From Bigelowiella natans CCMP2755 (taxonomy: Eukaryota > Protista > Cercozoa): a stretch of DNA of 64,000 bases. Positions 731 to 17,756 of the stretch are shown here, in pieces (position 1 is the first letter of the stretch; each line of letters begins with the position of its first letter). Under the pieces are notes generated by a model. That model did not search any database, had not been told where the DNA came from, and saw only the letters and a list, made by a program, of their open reading frames with translations. Where the stretch lies: contig ADNK01002135.1 of NCBI GenBank assembly GCA_000320545.1, positions 1-64,000 of the forward strand, given 5' to 3'. The position numbers and the translations under genes were made by a program.

Positions 731-2704
731 TGCAAAAAAAGGAGCAGAGACAAGCAATAGACAAGAATACCTGTCGCTATGTTCTAAGTTACCATTTTCA
801 CATCATGTTCAGATATGGACTGCAGCGTGTGTTCTCGGACAGCAGCTAGTCGTATCTTTCTGGAAAAAGTCGAAGTAACCATGATGAAAGATGATGATTG
901 GTGATTCATGCAGGCTAGCAGGGCTAAATAATCTGCTACATTTGCGTAGAGAGAAAATCAATGATTGATTTTAATAATTCGTTCTTGAAGTCAAAAACGA
1001 GGCAGATTCTCTTTTGAAAAACGACATCCTATCTAGCTATTCAGAACGTCAAATTAATGTTTTTGCATTTTGCAATAGTAGACTCTCCCTTCAATGTTCA
1101 ATGTTCAGTGATCCTAACACTGCACAGATCTAGAGATGGAAACTTTGCTTCATGAGTTTCGAATTTGTTTGTGAACAAATGTCTCCACTACGTTTCTGCT
1201 GTTTATACAAATGTACGAGAAAAATTTAATGCACGTCGTGCCATGCAAAATGTGATTCGGCCGTTAACATAGCTTTTTGTCGACGACATCATCATTGGAA
1301 TCCAAATTCGCACGCTGTGTGTCAGTCTGATTTATCTAGTCATTAGACAAAGCTGTTGCATGTTGAAAGCAGTTTGTCAATGTCTGCGTAGACACAAGGT
1401 ACATGACAACATCAAGCTAATTTTGCTTGATAACAAATTGACCCTCCACTAAACACTAAACACTGGCATGGTGATGATGCCTAGCTTTCATCAGTGCATG
1501 ATGATCATTGTTGCCATTTCGTGAATCTACAGGTGCTTCGTTCGGTCTACCAGACGTATTAAATTTATTTCGCCGGCTTGTATTCCTTTCTACATTTTCA
1601 TTATAGTGCTCTATCAACCTGGTGAGGAAAAATGTTGTCAGTGCAGAGAATGCGTGGCCTGCATTAATGATGAATAGAATACAAAATGCAGATCTATTGG
1701 ATTATCAACTGTACCTCCCAAATATCTTCCTTAGCTCTCGATTGAATTCTTTGTATGATAATTGTTGTGGATCTATTATTGTGAACATCAATTCAGAACC
1801 AGGGCTTATGTGTAGCCAACGACGACGCATTAATTGCATTAATACGCACAAAACACGTTCGTGTAGACAGCGATGAACTCATCCGCAGAGATTTTCTGAT
1901 TTTACAATATTCAAGTTTAGCCTAATAAACATTTGAATCGCCTCTATAGAACGCTAGAACCTTTGTATGGTCGATGTCAACCATTGCAAATATTTTCCGC
2001 ACTTCGTTTTCAATTTGTTTTTGTTGCTGAATGACGGAGACTTTAGTATTTAGTATGAGCTTATTGGAAACGATGATACACCTACCGTTTTACGTCTAAC
2101 AGCATCGGAAGCTCTTAAATTACGTTTCGATTTCTCCAGAAATTTTGTAGCTTCTAAGAAAGTAATTTCTCCAGATCCATCCTTGTCCAGCATGCCTGTT
2201 TTGAATCATCGCACAAGTCGCTGCTTCAGGCTTTAATTTAATAACAATCACAAAATATACCGAAGACTTCTTCAAGTCGTTCCCTAATTTCTCGAACTGT
2301 GGCCTTCGCGCTACCTTTCGACTCGCGAGGCATTGGGTCGTCAGCAGCCGACGAGCACAACCCCATGTGGATTGAGATGTTGAAGAGGAGATTTTGCACA
2401 AAGTAGTGCTCAGGTGATTCTGTGGTACAAATGGAACCTATTTCATCCACAGCGACTACCACACGAAATTCGACAAATATAAGGAAGAAAACCAAGTCGC
2501 ACCTCCTTAACATTTTACATTTTGCATGAGAATCTGTCGCAGTTTCCTTGCGGTGTCGTCTGGTTAAATTCGGGGCCATTTTTTGTGGGTGCTCATGAGA
2601 GCATCCGAGCAGCCAGCTGGTTCGCACATCGCACTCGCCTTCCCCCTGCGAGCAACCGTCTCGGACTTGGGTCGTCAGAAGTGAAGAGGAGGGCTAGAAA
2701 GGGC

Positions 2705-5194
2705 ATGAATGGCCTTAAGCTACGCGTTCCTTCTGCGAACGACATTCCTCTTTATTTCCTGCAGATAGGAATCGCCCTTATCTCCGTATTCCTGTGTTTG
2801 ATCGAGCTCTTGCCGCTACCTGCCACAACATGGAGCTTTGAGTTGCGTGGACTCCAAACTGGTGTGCTAATGGCGCTTTTCGGATTTGTTGTACTTCTCA
2901 GTATATGCAATTCCCATCGCTCCTCACCCTGGGACGGCTCGGCGCGGAGTCGCATTTCCGCGGCGACATTGTTGGCCATTCTGAACTGCGTTCCGATCCT
3001 GACGTGGGTCGCCACAACATCCTGGTATTTATGGTCCAACGACTGCAAAGGAACCCAACTCGCCTTTAGCAAGAAGTGTAACAAGGCTACCGTTCTATTA
3101 GACGCGATTGGTATCGTCACTGCTAGATTAGCTCGCATAGATATGGGCCTCTGCGTGCTACTGGCTGCTCGAGGCGAGACGACATGGCTTCTCGGAGCAA
3201 CGGGGTGGGTGGGGTTTCCTGAAGGAATTCCCTTGCACAGACTTACTGGCTGGTGGTGTATTGTTCAATCTGCCATTCACTCCATGGCCTACTTCCTATA
3301 CTACTACCTCAAGGGTAACTTATGGCGTGGCTGCTTTCCTGTGCCGTCATCATCATCGCTAAATAGGCTTGGACTCGTAAACTTTTTTGGGGTTCTTGCA
3401 TTCATAGCGTCCTTGCTACTTGGACTGTTAGCGCTGCCCCAAATTCGGAAGTCTTGGTATCATTTATTCCAGCAGACCCACCTTCCACTTGCATTGGTTT
3501 TCATTGTCGGCTCCGCTCTCCACGACCTCCCCATGTTGATGTTTTCTGTGCCCGGTCTAGCTGAGTGGTATTTTGGAAGGCTTGGCAGCAGCAGTAGCAG
3601 GATCAGGAGCAGTAGCAGTAGCAGTAGCATTTGCTATCGGAATTGGCTCGGATGTAATAGAACCTATGGTAGCATTTGCTCGGCATCTGTGCGGCTGAAG
3701 GCTAAGGCCCAAGTGCTCAACGGCACCTCGGCGCCCTGGATTAAACTTACGATAGAGAATCATGATAAGAATGATGTGGTGATCGCAGATTTTGATAGTT
3801 GCAGTAAAGCTGCTCCCCGTGGGCTCTGGGCATCGGTGAGAGTTATTCCCCTCAGCACAGAATTTCATCCTCTCTCGGTAGCGGTTGCTGGCGTCTCACC
3901 TCGTGATGAAAACTGGGAAGAGGAAGGGGCGGAAACGACGCAAAGATTGATAGCATTGGTGTCTTCCAAGGCGGGCGACTGGTCACAAGCGCTTCTAAAT
4001 CTTGCGACGAAGAAAGGCGAGAAGAAAAATGCAGATGATGGCATCTGTGATATTGAAGAAGACGCGGCCTGCAGTTTCGAGGTCGAGATGGAAGGCCCAT
4101 TTCCTGTAGGTGGGGGTGGGTGGTCATTGAGGGATGGAATCGATAGCGGTGCTCTTATTACTGATTCATCCAGAGACTGTAAAGGTCACAATAATGACAC
4201 AGCGCTGCTGCTTATTGCTGGAGGTTCGGGGATCATTGGATGGCTGCCCGGTTTGTGTGATACTAGTGCTGTTGCTGCTGGTGATGGTGAAGAAAAAGGA
4301 ACTAAAGGAGAGAATGTTAGCGACGGCCGTCAACATCGTTGTCATCTCATATGGTGTGTCAGAAAGGAGACTGATTACAAAGCTCTTGCCAAGTCCTTGC
4401 CTTCTGCGGAAAAAGTGGATGTCACTGTGTATGTAACGCAGTCAGCAGCGCCAAATGGCTCGCCATTGATGATTAATGAAGCGTCGAGTGGGGATGTGTT
4501 TGAGAGCCAGAGTCCGGGTTCCTTTCGAACAAAAATCAACATTTGTGGCAGCAGTAGCTTGATGAAATTGGTGTCACTCTTGGCATGTTTTACCGGCCTT
4601 GTCATCAACTACTGGGCTTGGTACGATGGAGTCTACCCACACCTTCAAACAACTTCGATGACGATGTTTCGCTACACTGTGGTATACCGATGTCTGCCCA
4701 TCGTTGTTACAATCGTATCTATTATCGTGATTTTGATGGCCGGTAGCATCTTGATGAGATCTTACGCGGAAAGGCCGGTCCGGTATCATTGCGCTCCAGT
4801 CATAAAAGAAAGTAGAGATGGGGTTGGTAGCAGAGATGATAGCAGAGATGATAGCATAATTGAATCTGAAAACTATGAGGTTTCACTGCTTGCTGCTAGC
4901 ACGCACCAAGAGCAAAAAGTGGCGTCCGAAAGTAGCCATCTTCGTGAGCACACCCCTGTTAAGCACACTATTCTTGCAGGGCGCCCTGACTTAGAAAAGG
5001 TGATTTTCGAAAGGTTAGATGCTCTCGATGCCAGCACGAAAAGGATTTTAGTCGTAGCTGCATGCGGACCTGATGCTCTCGTCAATGCGAGTAGGAAGGC
5101 TGTCGAGGCTGTTTCGAATGAAAGGCAGAAAGGGCGATCAAGACGATCCGCGAAAGTACATCTCAGATTTGCTGGGGCTCATTCGAATTGGTGA
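2705..5194 (+). CDS. Ferric reductase-like transmembrane flavocytochrome (FRE/FRO/NOX superfamily), intronless
   Basis: Heme His pairs LHRLTGWWCIVQSAIHS and THLPLALVFIVGSALHD; FAD motifs FHPLS and EGPF; NADPH motifs LLIAGGSGI, HLIWCVR, GRPDL and CGPDALV. First ATG in the open frame is at 2705. Confidence 0.9.
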   Translation: MNGLKLRVPSANDIPLYFLQIGIALISVFLCLIELLPLPATTWSFELRGLQTGVLMALFGFVVLLSICNSHRSSPWDGSARSRISAATLLAILNCVPILTWVATTSWYLWSNDCKGTQLAFSKKCNKATVLLDAIGIVTARLARIDMGLCVLLAARGETTWLLGATGWVGFPEGIPLHRLTGWWCIVQSAIHSMAYFLYYYLKGNLWRGCFPVPSSSSLNRLGLVNFFGVLAFIASLLLGLLALPQIRKSWYHLFQQTHLPLALVFIVGSALHDLPMLMFSVPGLAEWYFGRLGSSSSRIRSSSSSSSICYRNWLGCNRTYGSICSASVRLKAKAQVLNGTSAPWIKLTIENHDKNDVVIADFDSCSKAAPRGLWASVRVIPLSTEFHPLSVAVAGVSPRDENWEEEGAETTQRLIALVSSKAGDWSQALLNLATKKGEKKNADDGICDIEEDAACSFEVEMEGPFPVGGGGWSLRDGIDSGALITDSSRDCKGHNNDTALLLIAGGSGIIGWLPGLCDTSAVAAGDGEEKGTKGENVSDGRQHRCHLIWCVRKETDYKALAKSLPSAEKVDVTVYVTQSAAPNGSPLMINEASSGDVFESQSPGSFRTKINICGSSSLMKLVSLLACFTGLVINYWAWYDGVYPHLQTTSMTMFRYTVVYRCLPIVVTIVSIIVILMAGSILMRSYAERPVRYHCAPVIKESRDGVGSRDDSRDDSIIESENYEVSLLAASTHQEQKVASESSHLREHTPVKHTILAGRPDLEKVIFERLDALDASTKRILVVAACGPDALVNASRKAVEAVSNERQKGRSRRSAKVHLRFAGAHSNW

Positions 5195-5931
5195 TAGCTA
5201 ATCTAGCTAGCTAGTAATGCTAGAATGTTGAAAGCTACGTGGGGTGCATGTAGGTCTAGAGGTGTTTAACAATGAAGTGATGCACTGCTTGATTCAATGC
5301 TTGCATGTTCCCATTCCCGCTAGCCCGCTTGATGAGGTCGATGGCTTGAAGGCAATTAAGCTAGTGTTTTCCCTTGTGCTCGCATACATGCAGCAATGAG
5401 AAATTGCGTTTTCATTTGCATGTCATGCTAGCATGCAATGCACATCAACGCAGCGCATGTTCAAGCTTAGGAAGCTAAAGATATTGCATTATCTTCATGC
5501 ATGCAACACACTGTGACGAAGCACCACGCAGTCGTGCAGAGCTAGCATACGATTCATCTTATTACATGATCTTAACTGTACAAGCAAACATTCGTAGCTC
5601 TTGAGCGCACTCCCCTATTTTATCAAATGAGTAGTAACAATCGCGGAGATTCAGCTGCTTCTAAGACTGATATAAAACGGAGTGGAAGACTATATGCTAC
5701 CAAGTTTCGTGGCGAAAGAAGAAGGATTAAAGTATGTGTGGGTGAAAGTAAGTAGCCGCCCGTAGCTATTAGAAGAAGCGTGAATTTGAGGAAAAACGAT
5801 CACGATTAAAAAGAAGCACGAAGTAGCAGAAATTGCCGATTGGTGCGATGATTCTCCTTTCAAAACGGAGGAGCAAAGATGAACGAGTGCGTGGGAAACT
5901 TGCCTTTATTACTTTGGGGTACTTGCTACGA

Positions 5932-6338
5932 TTACTTCGGCGTACTCACCGTCGTCACCGCTGTGAGTGGGCTGTTGCTGCAATTATTATTACCATTATT
6001 ATTATTATTATTGTTATTGTTATTATTATTCCTATCATTAGCTAACTGGCGTGAAGGAAATCCATAATGAATCCCTTTAAATCCAGTATTCGCCAAACCG
6101 CGCAGTGACTTTGTCAACGGCAGCATGCACGAGTCGGCAGTTAGAGTCTCCCCAGCGTGGAGATATACCCAAGCTCCTACTACAGCTCGTGCACCGATGG
6201 TGGTGTTACCGAACCTGAAGCCGTTTTCCGTCACGAGATGCCCCTGAATGATGGCGTGTTCTGACACAACCGCACCAGCCTCAATCTGCGAACGTAAAGC
6301 CAGTGATGAGAGATGATAAGGGGCATTGCGGGAGGCGG

Positions 6339-6388
<50 letters not shown>

Positions 6389-9300
6389 TATGTATGCATT
6401 TATGATGTGATTTCTCCTCACTCACCGTGATGAAATCATGGTCAAATAGGATTTTGGTGTACACATCCGCGTCGGTGGATATCCTGCTCCCGAGCAAGTT
6501 GTAGTACAGACTCGCACAGGCTGACCCCGCGAAAGGAGGCAAAAGGCGTTGTCCAAAGGGAATCGTTTCTCCCCAAGAATGAAGCATGCTAAAGCAAGTA
6601 GAGGATAGAATAGATCAGCGACGAGTTCCACCGTCTTCGTTACAAGATGATCCAATGAATGAGATGTGTGCTCACCATAACCCTCGGAAGCTATATGGTT
6701 GCCAACAAACATCCTCATCTTCTTCTTCATCACTATCATCAGCTGCGTTCATGTTTCCTATCAGCATCCACTTATAAATCAAGGCGTGAGCCCCAAAAAT
6801 GAGCCCCCTGCCCGTCACAAAAGATAGTCAGTGTTTTCCGTGCTGTTAGCGACGTCGTAAATCATCTTCATCATCATCATCGTCATATCGCTATTGTTAC
6901 CATATGAAGATATAGCCTCCCCAAAGCACAACCGCAGCTTCTTCTTTAGCACCCGTCGCCTCGGATATCTCGATTCCGATCTCAAACGCAGCCCACACGG
7001 TCAAATACCTCGTCCCCAGACGTATGAGCAAAAGGATAGTGTCAAACACTACCAACAACGGATAAATGGAGGAGCTGCTTGAGCCTTCCGCCCCCTCCCC
7101 ATTTCCCTTCGGCTTCATACGTTTCATAACGCTATTAGCTACGCAAAGCGACCCAGATTTTATAACTCTCTGCTCTTCCTCCCCCCCCTCCTCGCCAGGA
7201 AGTCCTCCCCCCTCGATATGCGTCATATAGCCCACGGTGCAGTTGTCTTCAATCTTGACACTCCCTTCAACCCTAGCTCTCATTCCGATGAGGCTGTTAT
7301 CCCCAACCGTGATCCTGCATTTCGCGGTGGCGCTATTGCAGCGGCCCGTGTGGTAGGGGACGAGCTCCGCCACTGACATCAGCGTTTGGGAGCCAAGTTC
7401 CACGAGGTGTGCGTCCTCAGGATGGACTGATAGCCGGTTGCTCATAACGGTTTGCCTCCCGATCTTCATACCCAAGAGACGGCAGAACGTGTTGTGGACG
7501 GAGGTTTGGCGCCCAAGAATCAGGCCTAGGTAATACCCTTCCACGAGGAATGCCAGTTTCCCAAGCAGCCACCGCCTATACTCCGTGTACAGGGTCGCCT
7601 CAAAGGCGCCCTCGCGTACGGTGCTGGCCAGCACCCACTTCGCTAAGACCGTGAAGACAAAGAGCATTGACATGGCCCCGACGAGGAGGAAGGTAAAGAA
7701 GATCAGGTCGAAGTACCTGCGTGCGGATACAGAGTCGGGTTTCAATAGATTACATACAAATTGACAAAGTAGGAACAGACCAAAAAAGGAGCCAAACACA
7801 AAGGGGGAAAAAAAATCCCCAAGAATTACAATCATCAACAGGAACGCATCCAAGCTCACCGAATGTCCACGGCCGCATCTTGAAGGTTTCCCTCTCGAAT
7901 GCCAAACAAATCCACCGCCCAGAAGAGCAGCATTGCAGGGATTGAAAGCACAGCAAGCAGCCAAGGAAGCAAAAACAAGCTCAGGGCCTTCATAACATCC
8001 AACACTGCACCGCTCGAAAACGAGGATTTTTGCTTCACCACCTCCTCCTCCTCCTCCTCCTCTTCTTCTTCTCCCTCCTCAATTCCTCCGTGATGAAGGT
8101 CAGGGGAGTCATCGTCATCCTTTGGTGCAATTTTATGTATAGACGACTCTTCCGGCGACTTGCGTAACTTACGCTCATCAAGGGCGGCGCGCTGCTGCTT
8201 CGCTGGATTACCTTTCCATTCTGTGCGTGGTTGGAGATGAGACCTACCCGTAATACGTGTGAATGGATGCACAACGACGCCATGGCCCACTACTGAGCCT
8301 GGCTCGATCACCGACTTGGGACGAATCCTACTCTCACGCCCAATCTCAATGAAATCAAACTCAATGCTGGTATTGAATAGGAGCTTCCCGAGAAGAACTC
8401 CGTCGACCTTAGCCCCTGGCCCGATCTTGATGAGGTCAGGCTCACGAATGAAAGAACGAATCGTGGCATTCCACGACACTCTCGCTCCGAGGAGGATATA
8501 GAAGAGGTTGATGATCCTGGTATCACGGATGATTTGCCCGATTAGCACCTCCCACGTAGCCAGAATGCGGTCTACATACCACCATCGTAGCCAACAGAAG
8601 GAGTGTCGGCGTATTCGTTCTTTCTTGAATCTTCCGACGACAAGCCACTTCATCACCACCACCACAACTGAGAAACTCACCGCCCATATCGGTATAGTCA
8701 TTGCCAGCGCAAGGCCGATTGTGGTTGCTTCTTCATAAACGCCGATCTTGATCTCGCTCCAGGGGTCTCCGAGGTCTCTCACCTCTCTCGCGAAGTAGTA
8801 CGATGGCAGAGCCGCCGAAGCTGCAAGGAAAAATACAGAGATGGACAACAAGAATTGAATGACATGTCTGATCATGCCTCTTTCGCACAGACGAAGAAAG
8901 AGAAGAGTGCTGCCGGGATCTCCTCCTCCTCCTCCTCCTCCTCCTCCTCCTCCTTCTCCTCCTTTGGATTTCTCCATGAAATTGACCGGCTCATACTCTC
9001 GTTCCAGTATCTTCGAATCGCCCTGCGACTGCTGCTGCGACGACAATGCCGCCCACCCTGAGTGCATGCTTGAAATCGCGGGAAGGGTTGACGATCTCGG
9101 GCGAGTTTTGGAGTCGTTTGGTCGCTTGACATCTACCTTGCATTCCGACTCGAAACGTAGCAGCGAAGAACCCGCCCTCTGTGCCTGCAGGGACTTCTGC
9201 TTCAGGGCCTCCAAAGCCGACCCCCCCCCTGATTCCTCAAGATCGTCAATAGTTTCTTCTGATATTATAACTATACAGGAGCCCTCTGACCTCGGAATTT

Positions 9301-11906
9301 GCGAGAGTGCGGTCCTCCAATTCGATGCGTTGTACTCCGAGCGAAGGCGCTCGCAATGCCACGATACCAGCCTCTCTAGGTTCTTCGGTGTGAAGTGAAG
9401 CAGCAAGACTGAAGGCTCAAACTTAATGCAAAAACCCTCGAATATGGCCTCTGCCAACTCAACGAGGGTGATGGAATCTAGAAGAGAGCTCAATCGAGTC
9501 TCTGACACCGTGCTCCAAGCACCTTCCAGGAGCTCACAGAGCACGTTTCTAAAATCCTCCTCCTTCTCCACGAACTGGAAGCTGAGGGGAGGTTTCTTCA
9601 TTTCCCTCGATTTTATAGAGTCGGTTCTTTTTCTTGTTGTAGTTCTAGTTGTTGTTGTTGTTGTTGGGAGTGCTGTTGATGTCCCTTCCTGAAGAAGAGC
9701 CCTTTGTTCACTTCTTAGCCGGAAAACGTGCTCCAGCTTCCCTTCTTGGTATAAATCCTTCGCTACCGACCGCCTCAATTTCCCACTCGATGTCTTCGGA
9801 ATTGTGCGTGCGGGGATAAGGACGACATCCCACAACTTCACTTCAGAAGCCAGCGAGACGTGCCGTATTACTTCCGCGGCCAACGTTGAGAATGAAGAAT
9901 GCCGAGAAGGCCTTCTGTCTCTGACCTCGGATACCATTACCACCTGCTCGACCTCTCTCCCTTGCACAGAAAATGCTATGGTGCACCCAGGACGGATGCC
10001 TTCCACCGCATCGGCGGCTGTTTCGAAGTCCTTCGGAGCATAATTTTTCCCCCGGACGATGATTACATCTTTCAGCCGTGAAACGTAAAAAAGCTTGTTG
10101 TCTTCCATAAACCCTAGGTCTCCCGTCCGGAGCCAGGAAACTCTCGAGGCAATATGGCTGCTGCTGCTGCCGCAATGTTCTCCTTCATTATTTTCATTGT
10201 ACGAGCGCTTTCGATCGGCGTCCACAGGCGAGGAATTCGTCTTCAAATCCGCTTGAAACGTAGCCTTTGATGTAACAGGGTCCAGACCCCAATACCCCAA
10301 TGCTACTGAGGGAGAGCTTAGCCAGATCTCTCCATCGGAGCCCTTCGGAACTTCTAGGCACGTGTCGGGATCTACGATCTTACACAGGACGCCATTGAAT
10401 TTGCTGCTTCTGGGGTGATTGAAGACTCCAATGCACAAGCGATGATGACGGTGATCGTTGGTCCTCTTCGAGTAAGAACGCCCTCCTATATTCGAGTCAG
10501 AGCATGCTGTTACTACATGCTCTGCGAGACCGTAGCTACTGCTTACCGTCCCGCCCTTCATCCCATAGAAGGAAAAGAACCTCTCGAATTCTTCCACGTG
10601 TCTTGGGATATTGGCTTCCCCGCCCGCGCCAATACCGATGAGATTGCGCAGATGGAACCCGTGGGGTACGGGGCGTGTATTCCACTTTCTCAGGACAAGT
10701 TTGAACGCGAAGTTCGGCACGTTTGTCGCGTTGCATTTCATCTTCCACAACCCGTGAAGCCAAAGAGGTGGGCACCGGACAAAATCGAAGGGGCTCATAA
10801 AACAGCCAGAGGACCCGACGAAGAAGACAAGGAGGTAGTTGCAGATTAGTCCGAAATCGTGGTATTGAGGCAACCAACAGAAAGGTCGGTAACGCTGGTC
10901 ACTATCCCCCTCTCCATTGTGGTGATGATGATGGTGCGCACGTTTCATCGTCTCGAACATTTGATGATATAGGATCAAATTGTGCATGAGCGAAGAGTAT
11001 GGAACCATCACACCCTACGCAAGCATAAATTAGTGTGTGTGTGTGTGTGAGGGAGTGTTAGTAAATGATATGGGTAGGATGTGTGGAATAACGATGAGCA
11101 TCATCACCTTAGGGTCCCCAGTTGTCCCACTCGTATACTGAAGAAAAGCAAGGACTTCTTTGCACTTACCCTCTTCTTCAGTGCCATTCTGAGACGCCAA
11201 TTTTGTTTTATTTTTTATGGATCCACCTGATATAGGATGCAATTAGAAATACAAATTGTTGCATATATTAAAAAGGTTAAAAGTTTTTTCGTGCCCTCAA
11301 TAATACCTTCAATAATATCGGTGTCTACGAAGGGGGTCTTCGGCCAGCACCCAGATAAAACTTTTAGTTTTATCTTCCATATTTTCTCGGAGAATTTCCT
11401 ACATAGTTTTCAGAGTAAACTTCACACTATATCAGTACCCTTACAGGAACATGTGAAAAAGCTTTCTCACCTGTGAGTTAAAACTAGACGCGCGCCGCAA
11501 TTCTTGACGATGTAAGCCAACTTGACAACGCTTTTGATATGTAATGTACCGAGTAAGGTTGCTGCGAATGTTTATTCATTGGTTGAAACCACCTGTATTT
11601 CAGTTTGGAAGGGTTAGGGGGGTATATTGGTACAGCCACGGCTCCAGCTATCAGACACCCTAAGAAGGCCTGTATGAATTCCAGGTTGAATTCGTAGCAC
11701 AGAACTATGCGTTCCCCTTCTTCGACCCCTGCATTCTTCAAAAATTCAGCGACAGCGGTAGCCTTTTGCCAAACTTGAGAGTAAGTCAACTCCGTCGATA
11801 CATTTCCCTCCCCATCCATCCACTGGTACAGAGGAGAGTTTGGGTTTTTTTTTACATGAGACTCGAGAATGCCCAGGAATTTCTGGCGATGGTCAGAGGA
11901 TGCCAT
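5932..11906 (-). CDS. NRPS-like membrane enzyme: FAAL-like adenylation domain + carrier (ACP/PCP) domain + Pls-type terminal domain (three TM/LbH repeats), ~1734 aa
   Basis: Exons 11906-11593, 11530-11471, 11398-11307, 11226-11108, 11014-7860, 7716-6901, 6807-6676, 6588-6426 and 6285-5932 are all GT-AG and sum to 5205 nt in frame. Adenylation motifs: FLQYTSGTTGDPKGV, WLPQYHDFGLI, PNFAF, YGLAE, GEIWLSSPSVALGYW, LRTGDLGF, IPKTSSGKLRR. Carrier motif LDSITLVEL. Three KWxxxG...LLGxxI...hexapeptide units, the first ending WKGNPA and the last carrying IIQGHL. Confidence 0.9.
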
Positions 11907-13022
11907 CAGGGCTAGGCTAACCCTGGCTTCCTGAATTCGAGGCAAGCTCGAGGCTTTTGATGCTCGTGCAGCTCAAATTGGAGCATGCTCTCATGCATAT
12001 GAAGTGCAGGTATTGTGCAGATCTAGTGCGCATTGAGACGAGCGATCAGAAGGCAAGCTGTGCTCTCACTTGTCCGGCATAGATAGCGACAGTGAATTGA
12101 GAGAAAAATGGAAAAAAAGGCCTTGAAAACGAAAAAAGTCTTGATGTATTATTATAGGGATGTCGTAGGTTTAAAGATGCCCAATGGCTAAGGGCAAATT
12201 CCTTGTCGCAACATGGAAAATCATTCAACTCTCGAGAAATGAGTCCTGAAGAATCCAAAAACCATTTCCTTATCGAGTAAAATCGTTGTGGAATTGTGTT
12301 GATTAGCGAGAATTTATTTGTCGTAGATACAAATAAGAGAGCATTATCATGGACGAGAGCCGTTGTGAGACCTTACGAAATTCTAAAAACCAAGCTAGAA
12401 TGGCTGCCTCTGTGACCCTCTTTGGGAGGAACATCAGGAAATGTTCTCTGTCAAATGCCTTCTGGAAGTCGAGACTCCGAGAAGTATTAATCTTTAGCTC
12501 AATCACCGGTTTTCTAGCTCAGGAAACCAAATTTGCGGAGTATTACGCCTCTGATCCTGTTCAGCTATTCTTCGGCAAATTTAAAAACTGGTGCGAAGGA
12601 GAGGAGAGCAGGGAGCGGGGACAGTGGTGATGGATAGGCTAAAGAAATATGCAAGTTTATTTTTTCAAATGGTCACCTTAGCTATGGGGGCAGGATGAGC
12701 AGGGACGAGCAGTGTTGCCCTGCGCACACATCCACATTGATTCATCTCTTTCACGCAATGAGGGGGGAAAGGGGGAAACTCAAAATATTGGTCCTTATGT
12801 CGTCCATATAATTGACCTGCTCAAGTGTTGTAATAATTAACATCATATCTCATGCATTGCGTCGTCAGGGATAATATCCGACCTATTCACTTCATCATCT
12901 TCACTGCATCCCTCACGACCGCGATCGTTCTCTACTGGAAGTTCCTCTCCGTCTGGTACGATTCAATGCGAGAGGACAATCATTAGCAATAGTGGATTTC
13001 ATCCACTTTACCAAATTTACCA

Positions 13023-16005: not shown

Positions 16006-17247
16006 TCACTTTTTGTTGAGTTCTGGCTTTTTGACATGTTGCAAGTGCCAAAGTTGATACTCGGTATCCTTAAGATCAACCAACAAGAGATCACATTCTT
16101 CCTGCGTCGTATCTTTTAAAGGGATTGCTCGATATTCTTTCGGTGGTTTCGACACTTTTACCATTTTGAAGCCTCCTTTTAACAATGCACTCGCTAATTC
16201 TCCTCTTCCTGCCCTCTCCAAGGCCGTTACGTAAAAGAACTCCCCACCGTTCCTCACGGTGTCTTGCAACACTCGCAGAAACACGGGAACCATGTTTCTA
16301 TCGTACACCAAGTCAGATCCTATCACTATGTCGAAATTCTTGAGGAGTTTATGACGAGATTCTACGGTGGCATCCTCCTCGGTCTTTTTCACTTCATGGT
16401 AGGCATTCCAGTCAATAGTTTCGGCTGTCACCTTCGTGTTCTTAAACGCCCCCTTGTTGAGTTCCACGTTGTAGCTCATATTTTGCACGGTTTCCTTGGC
16501 AAGGTCTGTGATCACTACGCTCTTGGCCTCGGTAAATACGGCAACAGAAAGGCCTGCCAATCCGCATCCTGCTCCAAGTTCTAATACTGATTTCCCCCGC
16601 AACTTGTCGGAGTCGAGGGAAAGCATCCAGCGCGATAGAATAACTGAAGCACCCCATAACCCTAGCCCAGTTTGATCAGCAAGTGCGAGCAATCCAACCC
16701 CACCTGCGATCGAGGCGAGATTAGGCTCCACAATTGCCTTCTCCCGTATCTTAACAATTTTATTTTTTGAGTTGAAGATGAATGAGTGCGTTGCCTCTCT
16801 GAGTGATTCTAGTTTCTCTTCGTTGCCCTCGAGTAGCTTCTCCTCTGTGGCCGAATGATGTAATAACATATCTTGAAGAATGTCGACGTCACCTGATGTG
16901 AACGCCTCTGTCATCGCTCCTTTGCCAAACTCATTTTTCCGCAGCACATTGATATGCTTGTAGCTCTCGAGAAGAAGCTTCACAACAGCATTTTGCTTAA
17001 GCTGAGCTGCCCATTGGAGCGGTGTGTTCCCGCTTTTGTTTGGGAAATGAGAGGCTTTACTCTCAATTAGCAGTTTAACGCAAGCAACGTTCCCGTTGGC
17101 ACTGGCATAATGGAGGCCGCTGCAACCATTCGAAGACTTGAAGTCTATCGTCCCCTGACTTGGCTTCTTCGCTAATGCAGCCTTAAGTTCCTCCACCTCA
17201 CCATACCTTGCGTGCTCTAGAATGAGCGGGCCAATGTTGTTATCCAT
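16006..17247 (-). CDS. Ankyrin-repeat + METTL21/Methyltransf_16-type protein-lysine methyltransferase fusion, intronless
   Basis: Ankyrin repeats (GLHYASANGNVACVKLL, GNTPLQWAA) followed by QTGLGLWGASVILSRW, VLELGAGCGLAG, VVITDL, IDW and DIVIGSDLVYD. ATG at 17247. Confidence 0.9.
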   Translation of the reverse strand: MDNNIGPLILEHARYGEVEELKAALAKKPSQGTIDFKSSNGCSGLHYASANGNVACVKLLIESKASHFPNKSGNTPLQWAAQLKQNAVVKLLLESYKHINVLRKNEFGKGAMTEAFTSGDVDILQDMLLHHSATEEKLLEGNEEKLESLREATHSFIFNSKNKIVKIREKAIVEPNLASIAGGVGLLALADQTGLGLWGASVILSRWMLSLDSDKLRGKSVLELGAGCGLAGLSVAVFTEAKSVVITDLAKETVQNMSYNVELNKGAFKNTKVTAETIDWNAYHEVKKTEEDATVESRHKLLKNFDIVIGSDLVYDRNMVPVFLRVLQDTVRNGGEFFYVTALERAGRGELASALLKGGFKMVKVSKPPKEYRAIPLKDTTQEECDLLLVDLKDTEYQLWHLQHVKKPELNKK

Positions 17248-17756
17248 TTGGTAAAGCCGCGCCGCCCGGCGGTTTAGAACGATCGTGGCCCGTTCACGAC
17301 GGTCATTGTTCTCATTCTCGAGTATTCGGATCAGCACAGACTAGACCGAGACACCGAGACCCTTTTAACTGTCGTTCAATAAAAAAACTTGGCATTTTTA
17401 CCGAAGTCGAATTTGACCCAAAACCTTTGTCGCATGGTGTGGGATGGGCTGTGGTGCTAGTCGTCCTTGCTCAGTTAGACGGGGATTTCACGTATTTTTA
17501 ACTACGACATGCACATTGTGTTGTCGTTGTCTTTCCATATTCTCAGTATTTATTGAAGCATCTTAAGCAGGCAAAGCTCCAAGCTTGAAGCTCATCCCAT
17601 CGCCAGCTGAGTCTTTTGCTACAACTACAAAACTAACAAAAGAAAAAGATGAAACGAAACCTGTCAAACGCTTCGTGTGCTAAGCCCCGCCAAAGGTCGA
17701 ATGATGGCGGTCTTTTTTCGAAAAGTTACACCAAGCGGCAAAAGAAGGAACGCCTG

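What the first reader, a model, noticed from the sequence alone, without database searches (positions are those of the whole stretch)
5932..11906. FAAL-carrier-Pls-terminal-domain enzyme: candidate membrane-bound lipid/polymer synthetase in a eukaryote
Seen: one spliced ~1734-aa frame joins an adenylation domain with FAAL-type signatures (WLPxYHDxGLI, PNFAF, YGLAE, RGKNYxPxDxE, PKTSSGK), a carrier domain with an intact Ser (LDSI, ~9474), and three tandem units of TM segments + KWxxxG + LLGxxI + left-handed beta-helix, the last with QGH. Known: this terminal architecture matches epsilon-poly-L-lysine synthetase (Pls) and related homopoly(amino acid) synthetases, whose A domains load amino acids; FAALs load fatty acids on ACPs. 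Inference: this enzyme may polymerise or transfer (hydroxy/amino) acyl chains at a membrane to make a polyester, polyamide or lipid of unknown type, with no condensation, KS or TE domain. Related FAAL/ACP/LbH fusions occur in plants, so the novelty is mainly lineage and product. Eight spliceosomal introns show it is a resident nuclear gene.
Basis: partly seen in the sequence, partly recalled or inferred. Interest (0 to 1): 0.85.

Follow-up and report, generated by a model that had tools for sequence, protein, structure and literature searches.

The report
FAAL-carrier enzyme with Pls-like membrane module
This is a real, expressed nine-exon gene of the alga Bigelowiella natans for a membrane enzyme that activates a fatty-type acid, holds it on its own carrier domain and probably passes it to an acceptor. 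The transfer module is a distinct sister branch of the one bacteria use to make polylysine, the product is unknown, and this is the fourth such gene in the genome.

Summary

**Gene model**
- It is a minus-strand gene at 5932-11906 with 9 exons, 8 GT..AG introns of 62-143 nt, and 1734 codons.
- Transcript contigs from three studies support all eight introns.

**Domains**
- The adenylation domain matches fatty acyl-AMP ligases (FAALs) best, by HMM, by PDB sequence search and by fold.
- The carrier serine is invariant across 46 relatives.
- Three units follow, each a pair of membrane helices plus a left-handed beta-helix (LbH). They are specifically homologous to the Pls/PosA terminal domain.
- Only unit 3 keeps the Q-x-H histidine. 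That histidine is near-invariant in unit 3 of both bacterial Pls/PosA enzymes and FAAL-linked proteins.

**Family**
- The genome is Bigelowiella natans. It has four FAAL-type paralogues and one PKS-type gene with this module.
- This scan had already flagged such genes elsewhere in the same genome (s1-715958, s1-739066, s1-756083).
- FAAL-linked modules form their own clade, apart from Pls/PosA proper.
- All named members are eukaryotic: chlorarachniophytes, diatom, pelagophyte, labyrinthulid, chromerid, choanoflagellate and plants.
- I found no paper describing the fusion.

**Most likely function (inferred)**
- CoA-independent fatty acid activation, self-loading onto the carrier, then His-catalysed transfer to an acceptor at a membrane.
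- Polymerisation is less likely. The product is untested.

The parts
5932..11906 (-). Whole gene: 9 exons, 8 introns, 1734 codons plus stop.
   Evidence: Sequence reading. Transcript contigs of X1, X5 and X7 cover all 30 bins and show the splices.
9722..11906 (-). FAAL-type adenylation domain, spanning E1-E4 and the first ~430 aa of E5. Introns lie at 11592-11531, 11470-11399, 11306-11227 and 11107-11015.
   Evidence: Pfam AMP-binding in E1, E4 and E5. FAAL NCBIfam models score best, 1.6e-61. The top PDB sequence hits are mostly FAALs. The top Foldseek hits are all FAALs, E 7e-31. W-L-P..H-D-F-G-L, SPFDFVRCPPLWL and PNFAF align with the Legionella FAAL 3kxw.
9779..9799 (-). A10 motif PKTSSGK with the catalytic lysine (E5 K411).
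   Evidence: T407 and G410 are invariant and K411 is near-invariant (>=90%) in 46 relatives.
9332..9580 (-). Carrier (phosphopantetheine-binding) domain. The attachment Ser is E5 S513, codon 9475-9473.
   Evidence: Pfam PP-binding is below threshold, 15.2 bits against a cut-off of 20.8. S513 is invariant in 46 FAAL-type relatives and aligns with Pfam-positive carriers of P0070. The AF2 model shows a helical bundle with S513 at the start of helix 513-527, pLDDT 72-87.
8915..9331 (-). Low-complexity linker that includes a Gly run.
   Evidence: pLDDT below 50 for residues 614-698. Translation.
8177..8914 (-). Unit 1: TM1 (8878-8798), TM2 (8728-8627), KWLVVGR (8653-8630), ILLGARV (8497-8477) and a left-handed beta-helix.
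   Evidence: TIGR02353 at 2.4e-19. Pls/PosA-family hits to 4e-34. AF2 pLDDT 91.6. VIA-align Z 13.7 to hexapeptide acyltransferases. Hydropathy.
7860..8011 (-). TM3 (8011-7895) and the end of exon 5. Intron 5 is 7859-7717.
   Evidence: Hydropathy. Helix 998-1033 in the model. Splice joint.
6901..7716 (-). Exon 6: TM4, unit 2 (KWVLAS, LLGMKI, beta-helix) and TM5 (7079-7002).
   Evidence: Hexapep at 29.5 bits, above the cut-off. TIGR02353 at 1.8e-9. Hydropathy. Alignment.
5935..6807 (-). Unit 3, spanning exons 7-9. It holds the second half of TM6 with KWMLIG (E7), LLGSRI (E8) and a beta-helix with QGH (E9, His codon 6240-6238). Introns lie at 6900-6808, 6675-6589 and 6425-6286.
   Evidence: TIGR02353 positions 618-676 at 2.6e-3. 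The His aligns with a column that is His in 55 of 56 Pls/PosA-type and 18 of 20 FAAL-type unit 3 sequences. Splice joints.

Best explanation
The gene encodes a self-contained, membrane-embedded acyl-transfer enzyme.

**Proposed steps**
1. The FAAL domain adenylates a fatty (aliphatic) acid without using CoA.
2. The acyl group moves to the phosphopantetheine arm on the enzyme's own carrier domain (Ser513 of exon 5).
3. The carrier presents the thioester to the terminal module. By homology with PosA, this module is a pseudo-trimer of three beta-helices on six membrane helices.
4. The single conserved histidine of unit 3 acts as general base. An amine or hydroxyl of an acceptor attacks the thioester, and an N- or O-acyl product is released at or through the membrane.

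**What is shown**
- The gene, its splicing and its expression.
- FAAL identity at sequence and fold level.
- The carrier serine.
- Homology and colinearity of the three units with Pls/PosA.
- The unit-3 histidine.

**What is inferred**
- Every chemical step.
- The identity of the acid and of the acceptor.
- The membrane in which the enzyme sits.
For: - Splicing and expression are supported.
- FAAL identity rests. The CoA-rejection elements named in PMC8460268 are the bulky W224, M231 and F279, the FAAL-specific helix and P226. By my reading of the motifs (EcFAAL numbering was not checked), they correspond to W-L-P, F in place of M, SPFDFVRCPPLWL and PNFAF, all of which align with the Legionella FAAL 3kxw.
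- The catalytic A-domain residues are conserved in the family and present here.
- The carrier Ser is invariant, and the carrier folds as a helical bundle.
- Unit 1 hits Pls/PosA-family synthetases specifically.
- Relatives match TIGR02353 colinearly over positions 40-695.
- The unit-3 His is present in 55/56 and 18/20 sequences and is not conserved in units 1 or 2.
- The U1 positions K788 and G842 are invariant in 46 relatives. The matching K and G of unit 2 and the G and H of unit 3 are near-invariant in relatives and present here.
- The soluble part of unit 1 has the LbH acyltransferase fold, Z 12-14.
- From established knowledge, LpxA and LpxD are LbH enzymes that move fatty acyl groups from acyl-ACP using an interface histidine. 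Pls transfers a carrier-bound acyl group to a free amine (PMC10522769).
- There is no signal peptide. Each unit has two membrane helices, so all soluble domains face one side of the membrane.
Against: - No biochemistry exists for any FAAL-linked member.
- The near-invariant Gly three residues before the carrier Ser is Leu here.
- Pfam PP-binding is below threshold.
- The piecewise TIGR02353 scores (69, 37 and 16 bits) are far below the curated 423-bit cut-off.
- Only one weak PPTase hit was found in the genome.
- The acyl pocket was not analysed, so the acid could be something other than a plain fatty acid.
- The pseudo-trimer and the position of the His at an interface were not modelled for this protein.
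Confidence: 0.62

Rival explanations
1. The enzyme is a polymerase. It would load an omega-hydroxy or amino acid and extend a polyester or polyamide iteratively, as Pls does with lysine.
For: - The terminal module is homologous to an iterative polymerase.
- This paralogue keeps the full Pls-like Q-x-H-L signature. Gln is present in 50 of 56 Pls/PosA-type unit 3 sequences, but the commonest residue at that position in FAAL-type relatives is Ile (4 of 20).
Against: - The A domain matches FAALs that take plain long-chain acids. The best fold matches are bound to stearoyl or palmitoyl adenylate.
- FAAL-linked modules form a clade apart from Pls/PosA proper, SH-aLRT 96.
- Unit 1 and unit 2 have diverged strongly from unit 3 in this clade.
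- No bifunctional substrate is indicated.
Confidence: 0.15
2. The terminal module is a non-catalytic membrane anchor or export channel. In this reading the FAAL-carrier pair hands the acyl chain to a separate enzyme, such as a PKS or another acyltransferase.
For: - Units 1 and 2 lack the histidine.
- Bacterial FAAL-ACP pairs usually feed other enzymes (PMC8460268).
Against: - Units 1 and 2 also lack the His in working Pls/PosA enzymes.
- The unit-3 His and the K/G positions of each unit are conserved across distant eukaryotes. That conservation is not expected of a mere anchor.
- The A-domain tree and the unit-1 tree both cluster the fusion proteins, so the parts are inherited together.
Confidence: 0.13
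3. This copy is a decaying or redundant paralogue without function.
For: - Four paralogues exist in the genome.
- No close orthologue was found. The best match is 35% identical.
- The carrier has Leu where the family has Gly.
- The protein carries many homopolymer runs.
Against: - The 5.2-kb frame is intact across 9 exons.
- It is spliced and expressed in three studies.
- All family-invariant catalytic positions are kept.
- Its branch length is typical of the family: 0.85 against a median of 0.88.
Confidence: 0.08

Closest known systems
Epsilon-poly-L-lysine synthetase Pls (Streptomyces albulus) and delta-poly-L-ornithine synthetase PosA (Acinetobacter baumannii), NCBIfam TIGR02353
   Same: - Domain order: A domain, carrier, then three tandem units. 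Each unit has two membrane helices and a left-handed beta-helix.
- No C or TE domain.
- Unit-3 Q-x-H-L motif (PMC10522769).
   Different: - The loading domain is a FAAL, not an amino-acid A domain.
- HMM scores are far below the family cut-off.
- Unit 1 falls in a separate clade.
- The gene is eukaryotic, with introns and long low-complexity linkers.
- A plain fatty acid cannot be polymerised.
Paralogue Bigna1 91948 (P0001, G000:C230), with further paralogues at C3248 and C2848 in the same genome
   Same: - Same architecture.
- The A domain is 51% identical and is sister in the tree, support 99.
- Unit 1 matches unit 1 at 1e-60.
   Different: - Only 35% identical overall.
- P0001 has a 134-aa N-terminal extension and more exons.
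- This copy has Q-G-H where P0001 has L-G-H.
Plant FAAL-like multidomain proteins (HemY or amine oxidase, FAAL, catalase), noted as uncharacterised in PMC8460268. Examples are Linum P0070 and P0116.
   Same: FAAL, PP-binding domain and a TIGR02353-like module, 185 bits.
   Different: - The plant proteins add flavin amine-oxidase or catalase domains.
- Their unit 1 lies outside the main FAAL-type clade, on a long branch.
- The paper did not mention the Pls-like module in the passages I read.
LpxA and LpxD, acyl-ACP-dependent left-handed beta-helix acyltransferases
   Same: - LbH fold. LpxD matches at Z 8.8 and 7.8.
- Fatty acyl transfer from a carrier thioester using a histidine (established knowledge).
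   Different: - They are soluble homotrimers with three active sites that use a free ACP.
- Here there are three fused, unequal units on a membrane base, with one histidine and a built-in carrier.
Bacterial FAAL-ACP loading didomains (olefin synthase, FadD32)
   Same: Best sequence and fold matches for the A domain.
   Different: Those enzymes feed a PKS or NRPS. Here the downstream partner is the Pls-like module.

Membership tests
Fatty acyl-AMP ligase (FAAL) | ANL core motifs, including the A10 lysine | tested here: met
   YTSGTTGDPK, YGLAE, LRTGDLG, RGKNY and PKTSSGK are all present. D298, R312, T407 and G410 are invariant and K411 near-invariant in 46 relatives.
Fatty acyl-AMP ligase (FAAL) | Closer to FAALs than to acyl-CoA ligases or amino-acid A domains | tested here: met
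   FAAL models score 1.6e-61 to 1e-45, against 4e-14 for PRK06187 and 7e-9 for AA-adenyl-dom. One model labelled CoA ligase, PRK07768, also scored 4.5e-48. PDB top hits are mostly FAALs and the Foldseek top hits are all FAALs.
Fatty acyl-AMP ligase (FAAL) | FAAL-specific insertion after motif A5 | tested here: met
   The region aligns with the insertion region of 3kxw with only about 8 residues fewer. The model shows an extra segment at about 173-207.
Fatty acyl-AMP ligase (FAAL) | CoA-rejection elements: bulky W, M and F residues, the FAAL-specific helix and a conserved Pro (PMC8460268) | tested here: met
   CWLPQYHDFGL, SPFDFVRCPPLWL and PNFAF align with the Legionella FAAL. Met is replaced by Phe. 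EcFAAL residue numbering was not checked.
Fatty acyl-AMP ligase (FAAL) | Forms acyl-AMP and loads holo-ACP but not CoA | not testable with these tools
   This needs an enzyme assay.
Carrier protein (PP-binding, PF00550) | Pfam score over the gathering threshold | tested here: not met
   15.2 bits against a cut-off of 20.8, E 0.026.
Carrier protein (PP-binding, PF00550) | Conserved Ser at the start of helix II in a helical bundle | tested here: met
   S513 is invariant in 46 relatives. Helix 513-527 has pLDDT 72-87. The Gly at position -3 is Leu here.
Pls/PosA family synthetase (TIGR02353) | Three tandem units, each with two TM helices and an LbH | tested here: met
   TM6 is split by intron 6.
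Pls/PosA family synthetase (TIGR02353) | HMM score over the curated 423-bit cut-off | tested here: not met
   69.2, 36.6 and 16.2 bits exon by exon. Full-length relatives reach 141-185 bits. The joined protein was not scanned.
Pls/PosA family synthetase (TIGR02353) | Amino-acid-activating NRPS A domain | tested here: not met
   The domain is FAAL-type.
Pls/PosA family synthetase (TIGR02353) | Unit-3 Q-x-H motif | tested here: met
   His is present in 55/56 and Gln in 50/56 Pls/PosA-type unit 3 sequences. This gene has Q-G-H.
Pls/PosA family synthetase (TIGR02353) | Makes a homopoly(amino acid) | not testable with these tools
   This needs product analysis.
Left-handed beta-helix acyltransferase superfamily | Hexapeptide repeats and the LbH fold | tested here: met
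   Hexapep scores 29.5 bits in unit 2 (over the cut-off), 23.3 in unit 1 and 16.7 in unit 3. VIA-align Z is 13.7, 13.6 and 12.5 to acetyltransferases.

The most novel reading that the evidence does not exclude
FAAL-linked Pls-like proteins would be an unrecognised, widespread eukaryotic class of CoA-independent membrane lipid synthases.
- They would make N-acyl amines, lipoamino acids or O-acyl lipids of a type not yet described.
- They might export the product through their own six-helix base.
- Relatives fused to DOMON/copper monooxygenase, flavin amine oxidase or catalase domains would then modify that product.
- The strongest version is that some members polymerise functionalised fatty acids into a membrane-made polyester or polyamide.
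Probability: 0.35. Interest if true: 0.8.

Novelty: new variant of a known kind. Interest (0 to 1): 0.55.

Why it matters
**State of knowledge**
- The Pls/PosA terminal module is known only from bacterial and fungal enzymes that make cationic poly-amino acids.
- No experimental structure of the module is in the PDB copy searched.

**What this gene shows**
- The same module is driven here by a fatty-acid-activating, CoA-rejecting domain.
- The enzyme belongs to a distinct clade that spans several eukaryotic supergroups.
- Members are annotated only as "FadD21-like ligase" or "carrier domain protein".

**What follows**
- Identifying the product would define a new route from free fatty acids to membrane or secreted lipids in algae and plants.
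- It would also show what chemistry the Pls-type module can perform beyond polyamide synthesis.
- The single conserved unit-3 histidine gives a direct point for mutagenesis.

Tried and rejected
1. **TIGR02353 specificity.** Sub-threshold TIGR02353 hits alone are weak evidence. The same search rang in 13 of 14 control genomes because of generic hexapeptide repeats. I resolved this with a unit-1-only search and an exhaustive search.
2. **Misaligned fragment.** Alignment A1, starting from a carrier-to-unit-1 fragment, misaligned the carrier. I replaced it with A2, built on the whole exon 5.
3. **MAFFT --auto offset.** MAFFT --auto shifted the short exon-9 fragment by four columns. L-INS-i placed the His correctly.
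4. **Foldseek on the whole exon-5 model.** It saw only the A domain, so I folded unit 1 alone. No solved chain matched the membrane-helix part.
5. **Raw RNA run X16.** It gave only 3 reads from the 6% of the run that was read. The transcript strand, ends and expression level were therefore not determined.
6. **Odd joint in X7.** A joint 10882>11111 has depth 6 and a 27-nt side, with GT..AG on the wrong strand. I took it as a repeat artefact.
7. **Literature.** I found no paper on FAAL fused to a Pls-type domain and none on a Pls cryo-EM structure. One preprint calls the domain in Symbiodiniaceae "of unknown function".
8. **Bacterial operon context.** I looked for it to get functional clues. 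The two metagenomic relatives I examined sit among eukaryotic-type genes.
9. **Steps not taken.** Complex prediction was not used.

Full report
**Gene and expression**

The finding lies on the minus strand. Reading the sequence gives nine exons:

| Exon | Coordinates |
|---|---|
| E1 | 11906-11593 |
| E2 | 11530-11471 |
| E3 | 11398-11307 |
| E4 | 11226-11108 |
| E5 | 11014-7860 |
| E6 | 7716-6901 |
| E7 | 6807-6676 |
| E8 | 6588-6426 |
| E9 | 6285-5932 |

- The eight introns are 62, 72, 80, 93, 143, 93, 87 and 140 nt long and all are GT..AG.
- I laid contigs of three runs from three studies, plus one raw RNA run, on 5925-11924.
- Six introns appear as explicit joints.
- Intron 6 is shown by adjoining pieces of two records.
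- Intron 4 is shown by the arithmetic of X1 record 4, in which 272 nt lie between 11013 and 11593. That equals one base plus E4, E3 and E2.
- X1 covers all 30 bins. Its contigs break only at homopolymer-codon runs.
- Most of the A domain, the carrier and unit 1 lie in one 3155-nt exon, so that fusion does not depend on any splice.
- The runs are recorded as RNA only by a guess, but intron-free contigs cannot come from genomic DNA.

**Organism and paralogues**

- Earlier notes of this scan name the genome as Bigelowiella natans.
- I checked this. The JGI protein Bigna1 91948 (P0001) maps at about 100% identity to contig C230 of the window's own assembly.
- The assembly is 91.4 Mb.
- A TIGR02353 search of the genome finds five loci: C230, C1602 (this gene), C2848, C3248 and C2875.
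- The first four also carry a FAAL.
- C2875 carries a ketosynthase about 9 kb upstream instead.
- The scan had therefore already met this architecture on other DNA of the same genome (s1-715958, s1-739066; PKS type s1-756083).
- The protein of this gene itself was not in either protein collection. The best match is the paralogue P0001 at 35% identity.

**Adenylation domain**

- Exon-by-exon scans give AMP-binding in E1, E4 and E5.
- FAAL models are the best NCBIfam matches. PRK05850 scores 1.6e-61 and FadD21, FadD28 and FadD32 score 1e-45 to 1e-53. Most acyl-CoA ligase models score 4e-14 or weaker. The exception is PRK07768, labelled a CoA ligase, at 4.5e-48. The amino-acid adenylation model scores 7e-9.
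- The best PDB sequence matches are mostly FAALs: Legionella FAAL 3kxw, the olefin synthase FAAL, FadD32 and FadD23.
- An AlphaFold model of exon 5 has A-domain pLDDT mostly 80-96.
- That model finds the same FAALs first by fold, E 7e-31.
- PMC8460268 names FAAL-specific, CoA-rejecting features. By my reading they correspond to W-L-P-x-Y-H-D-(M, here F)-G-L, the helix region SPFDFVRCPPLWL and PNFAF. I did not check the EcFAAL residue numbering.
- All of these align with the Legionella FAAL.
- The FAAL insertion is present and about 8 residues shorter.
- In an A-domain tree this gene is sister to P0001, support 99. The next sister is the Amorphochlora amoebiformis protein P0158, also support 99.

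**Carrier**

- Pfam PP-binding is below threshold, 15.2 against 20.8 bits.
- The serine of LLDSIT (codon 9475-9473) is invariant in 46 FAAL-type relatives.
- It aligns with Pfam-positive carriers of plant relatives.
- In the model it sits at the start of a helix in a helical bundle.
- One caution applies. The near-invariant glycine three residues before the serine is leucine here.

**Terminal module**

- Hydropathy finds five membrane segments, plus a sixth that is split by intron 6.
- TIGR02353 matches unit 1 at 2.4e-19, unit 2 at 1.8e-9 and unit 3 at 2.6e-3.
- Such weak hits can come from generic hexapeptide repeats. The control search rang in 13 of 14 genomes.
- I therefore searched unit 1 alone.
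  - It finds Pls/PosA-family synthetases down to 4e-34.
  - It finds 1209 representatives at E<=1e-3, most of them with three matched stretches.
- One of these hits, P0132, has an A domain that matches the solved Pls A domain 7wew at 5.6e-194.
- Full-length relatives match TIGR02353 colinearly. P0002 covers positions 40-695.
- Unit 1 folded alone gives pLDDT 91.6. The model has two long helices, a helical layer and a six-residue-period beta-helix.
- Its best structural matches are hexapeptide acyltransferases, Z 13.7, 13.6 and 12.5.
- Nothing solved matches the membrane part.
- No solved chain covers the terminal domain of Pls.

**A single histidine**

- I aligned the units of Pls/PosA-type and FAAL-type proteins.
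- One column is histidine in 55 of 56 Pls/PosA-type unit 3 sequences and in 18 of 20 FAAL-type unit 3 sequences.
- That column is not conserved as histidine in units 1 or 2 of either class.
- This gene has Q-G-H-L there (codon 6240-6238), matching the Pls Q-T-H-L.
- The other near-invariant positions are also kept here. These are the K of KW and the G of LLG in units 1 and 2, and the G of LLG in unit 3.
- By analogy with trimeric beta-helix acyltransferases, and with the PosA model in PMC10522769, this suggests a pseudo-trimer with one active site. This is inference.

**Family**

- Among the best 150 representatives found with unit 1, roughly 60 carry a FAAL-type domain, about 40 carry an amino-acid A domain, and the rest are fragments or unclear.
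- In a unit-1 tree, 23 of 26 FAAL-type sequences form one clade with SH-aLRT 96, apart from the Pls/PosA type. It was a quick search. Three long-branch rows, including the plant protein, fall outside the clade.
- In FAAL-type proteins, unit 1 of this gene matches their unit 1 strongly and their units 2 and 3 weakly.
- All named members are eukaryotic: Amorphochlora, Chrysophaeum, Salpingoeca kvevrii, Mucochytrium, Chromera, Seminavis and Linum.
- Two metagenomic relatives sit among eukaryote-type genes.
- Some relatives add other domains:
  - DOMON plus copper monooxygenase;
  - flavin amine oxidase;
  - catalase;
  - a ketosynthase;
  - a WW domain.

**Mechanism and rivals**

- The best-supported reading has three stages: CoA-independent activation of a fatty-type acid, self-loading onto the carrier, and His-catalysed transfer to an acceptor at a membrane.
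- A plain fatty acid has no second functional group, so single transfer is more likely than polymerisation.
- Polymerisation of hydroxy or amino acids is not excluded.
- An anchor-only role for the terminal module fits poorly with the conserved positions.

**Literature**

- PMC8460268 reports plant FAAL-like proteins with HemY and catalase domains as uncharacterised.
- PMC10522769 describes PosA and the modelled terminal domain.
- A 2026 preprint calls the domain in Symbiodiniaceae "of unknown function".
- I found no paper on the FAAL fusion.

**Limits**

- The joined protein was not built, scanned or folded.
- Read laying was kept to 6000 letters.

Noticed in passing
window 2522-5194 (+): A single 890-aa open frame carries Ferric_reduct and NAD_binding_6 domains, so it is a NOX or ferric-reductase type gene. 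It is convergent with this gene, and the two stops are about 740 nt apart.
   Followed up: partly
window 16006-17337 (-): A 443-aa open frame joins ankyrin repeats to a Methyltransf_16 lysine methyltransferase domain.
   Followed up: partly
window 6343-6382; 10936-10919; 9664-9647; 8953-8921; 8071-8030; about 6033-5983: A (TA)n microsatellite lies inside intron 8. The coding sequence also has homopolymer codon runs of His, Thr, Gly, Glu and Asn. The transcript contigs break at these runs.
   Followed up: no
window 9681 and 9706: Transcript contigs of X1 and X5 read G>C and G>T near the Thr-run linker. The differences lie 34 and 59 nt from a contig end. They could be alleles or repeat artefacts.
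   Followed up: no
G000:C2875:135463-147082 (+): A ketosynthase (163 bits) lies about 9 kb upstream of TIGR02353-like units. This is the PKS-type counterpart of this architecture in the same genome.
   Followed up: partly
L015 (G000:C3248) 4204-9459 (-): This paralogue has its whole terminal module in one 1090-aa open frame. Its unit 1 pairs with Amorphochlora amoebiformis P0158, support 99, so it is a likely orthologue pair across chlorarachniophytes.
   Followed up: partly
P0245, P0188, P0171, P0136-P0155: Relatives carry extra domains. P0245 has DOMON plus a copper type II monooxygenase before the FAAL. P0188 has a flavin amine oxidase after it. P0171 has a ketosynthase between two carriers. 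Agaricomycete proteins (Mycena and others) add RING fingers to an A-T-terminal-module protein.
   Followed up: partly
G000:C1980:16910-17038 (+): This is the only hit to the phosphopantetheinyl transferase family PF01648 in the genome. It scores 26.3 bits in a 73-aa open frame.
   Followed up: no
L021 8134-9117 and L022 5719-6669: In two metagenomic contigs, an alpha/beta-hydrolase gene lies directly after the FAAL-type relative P0163, on the same strand.
   Followed up: no
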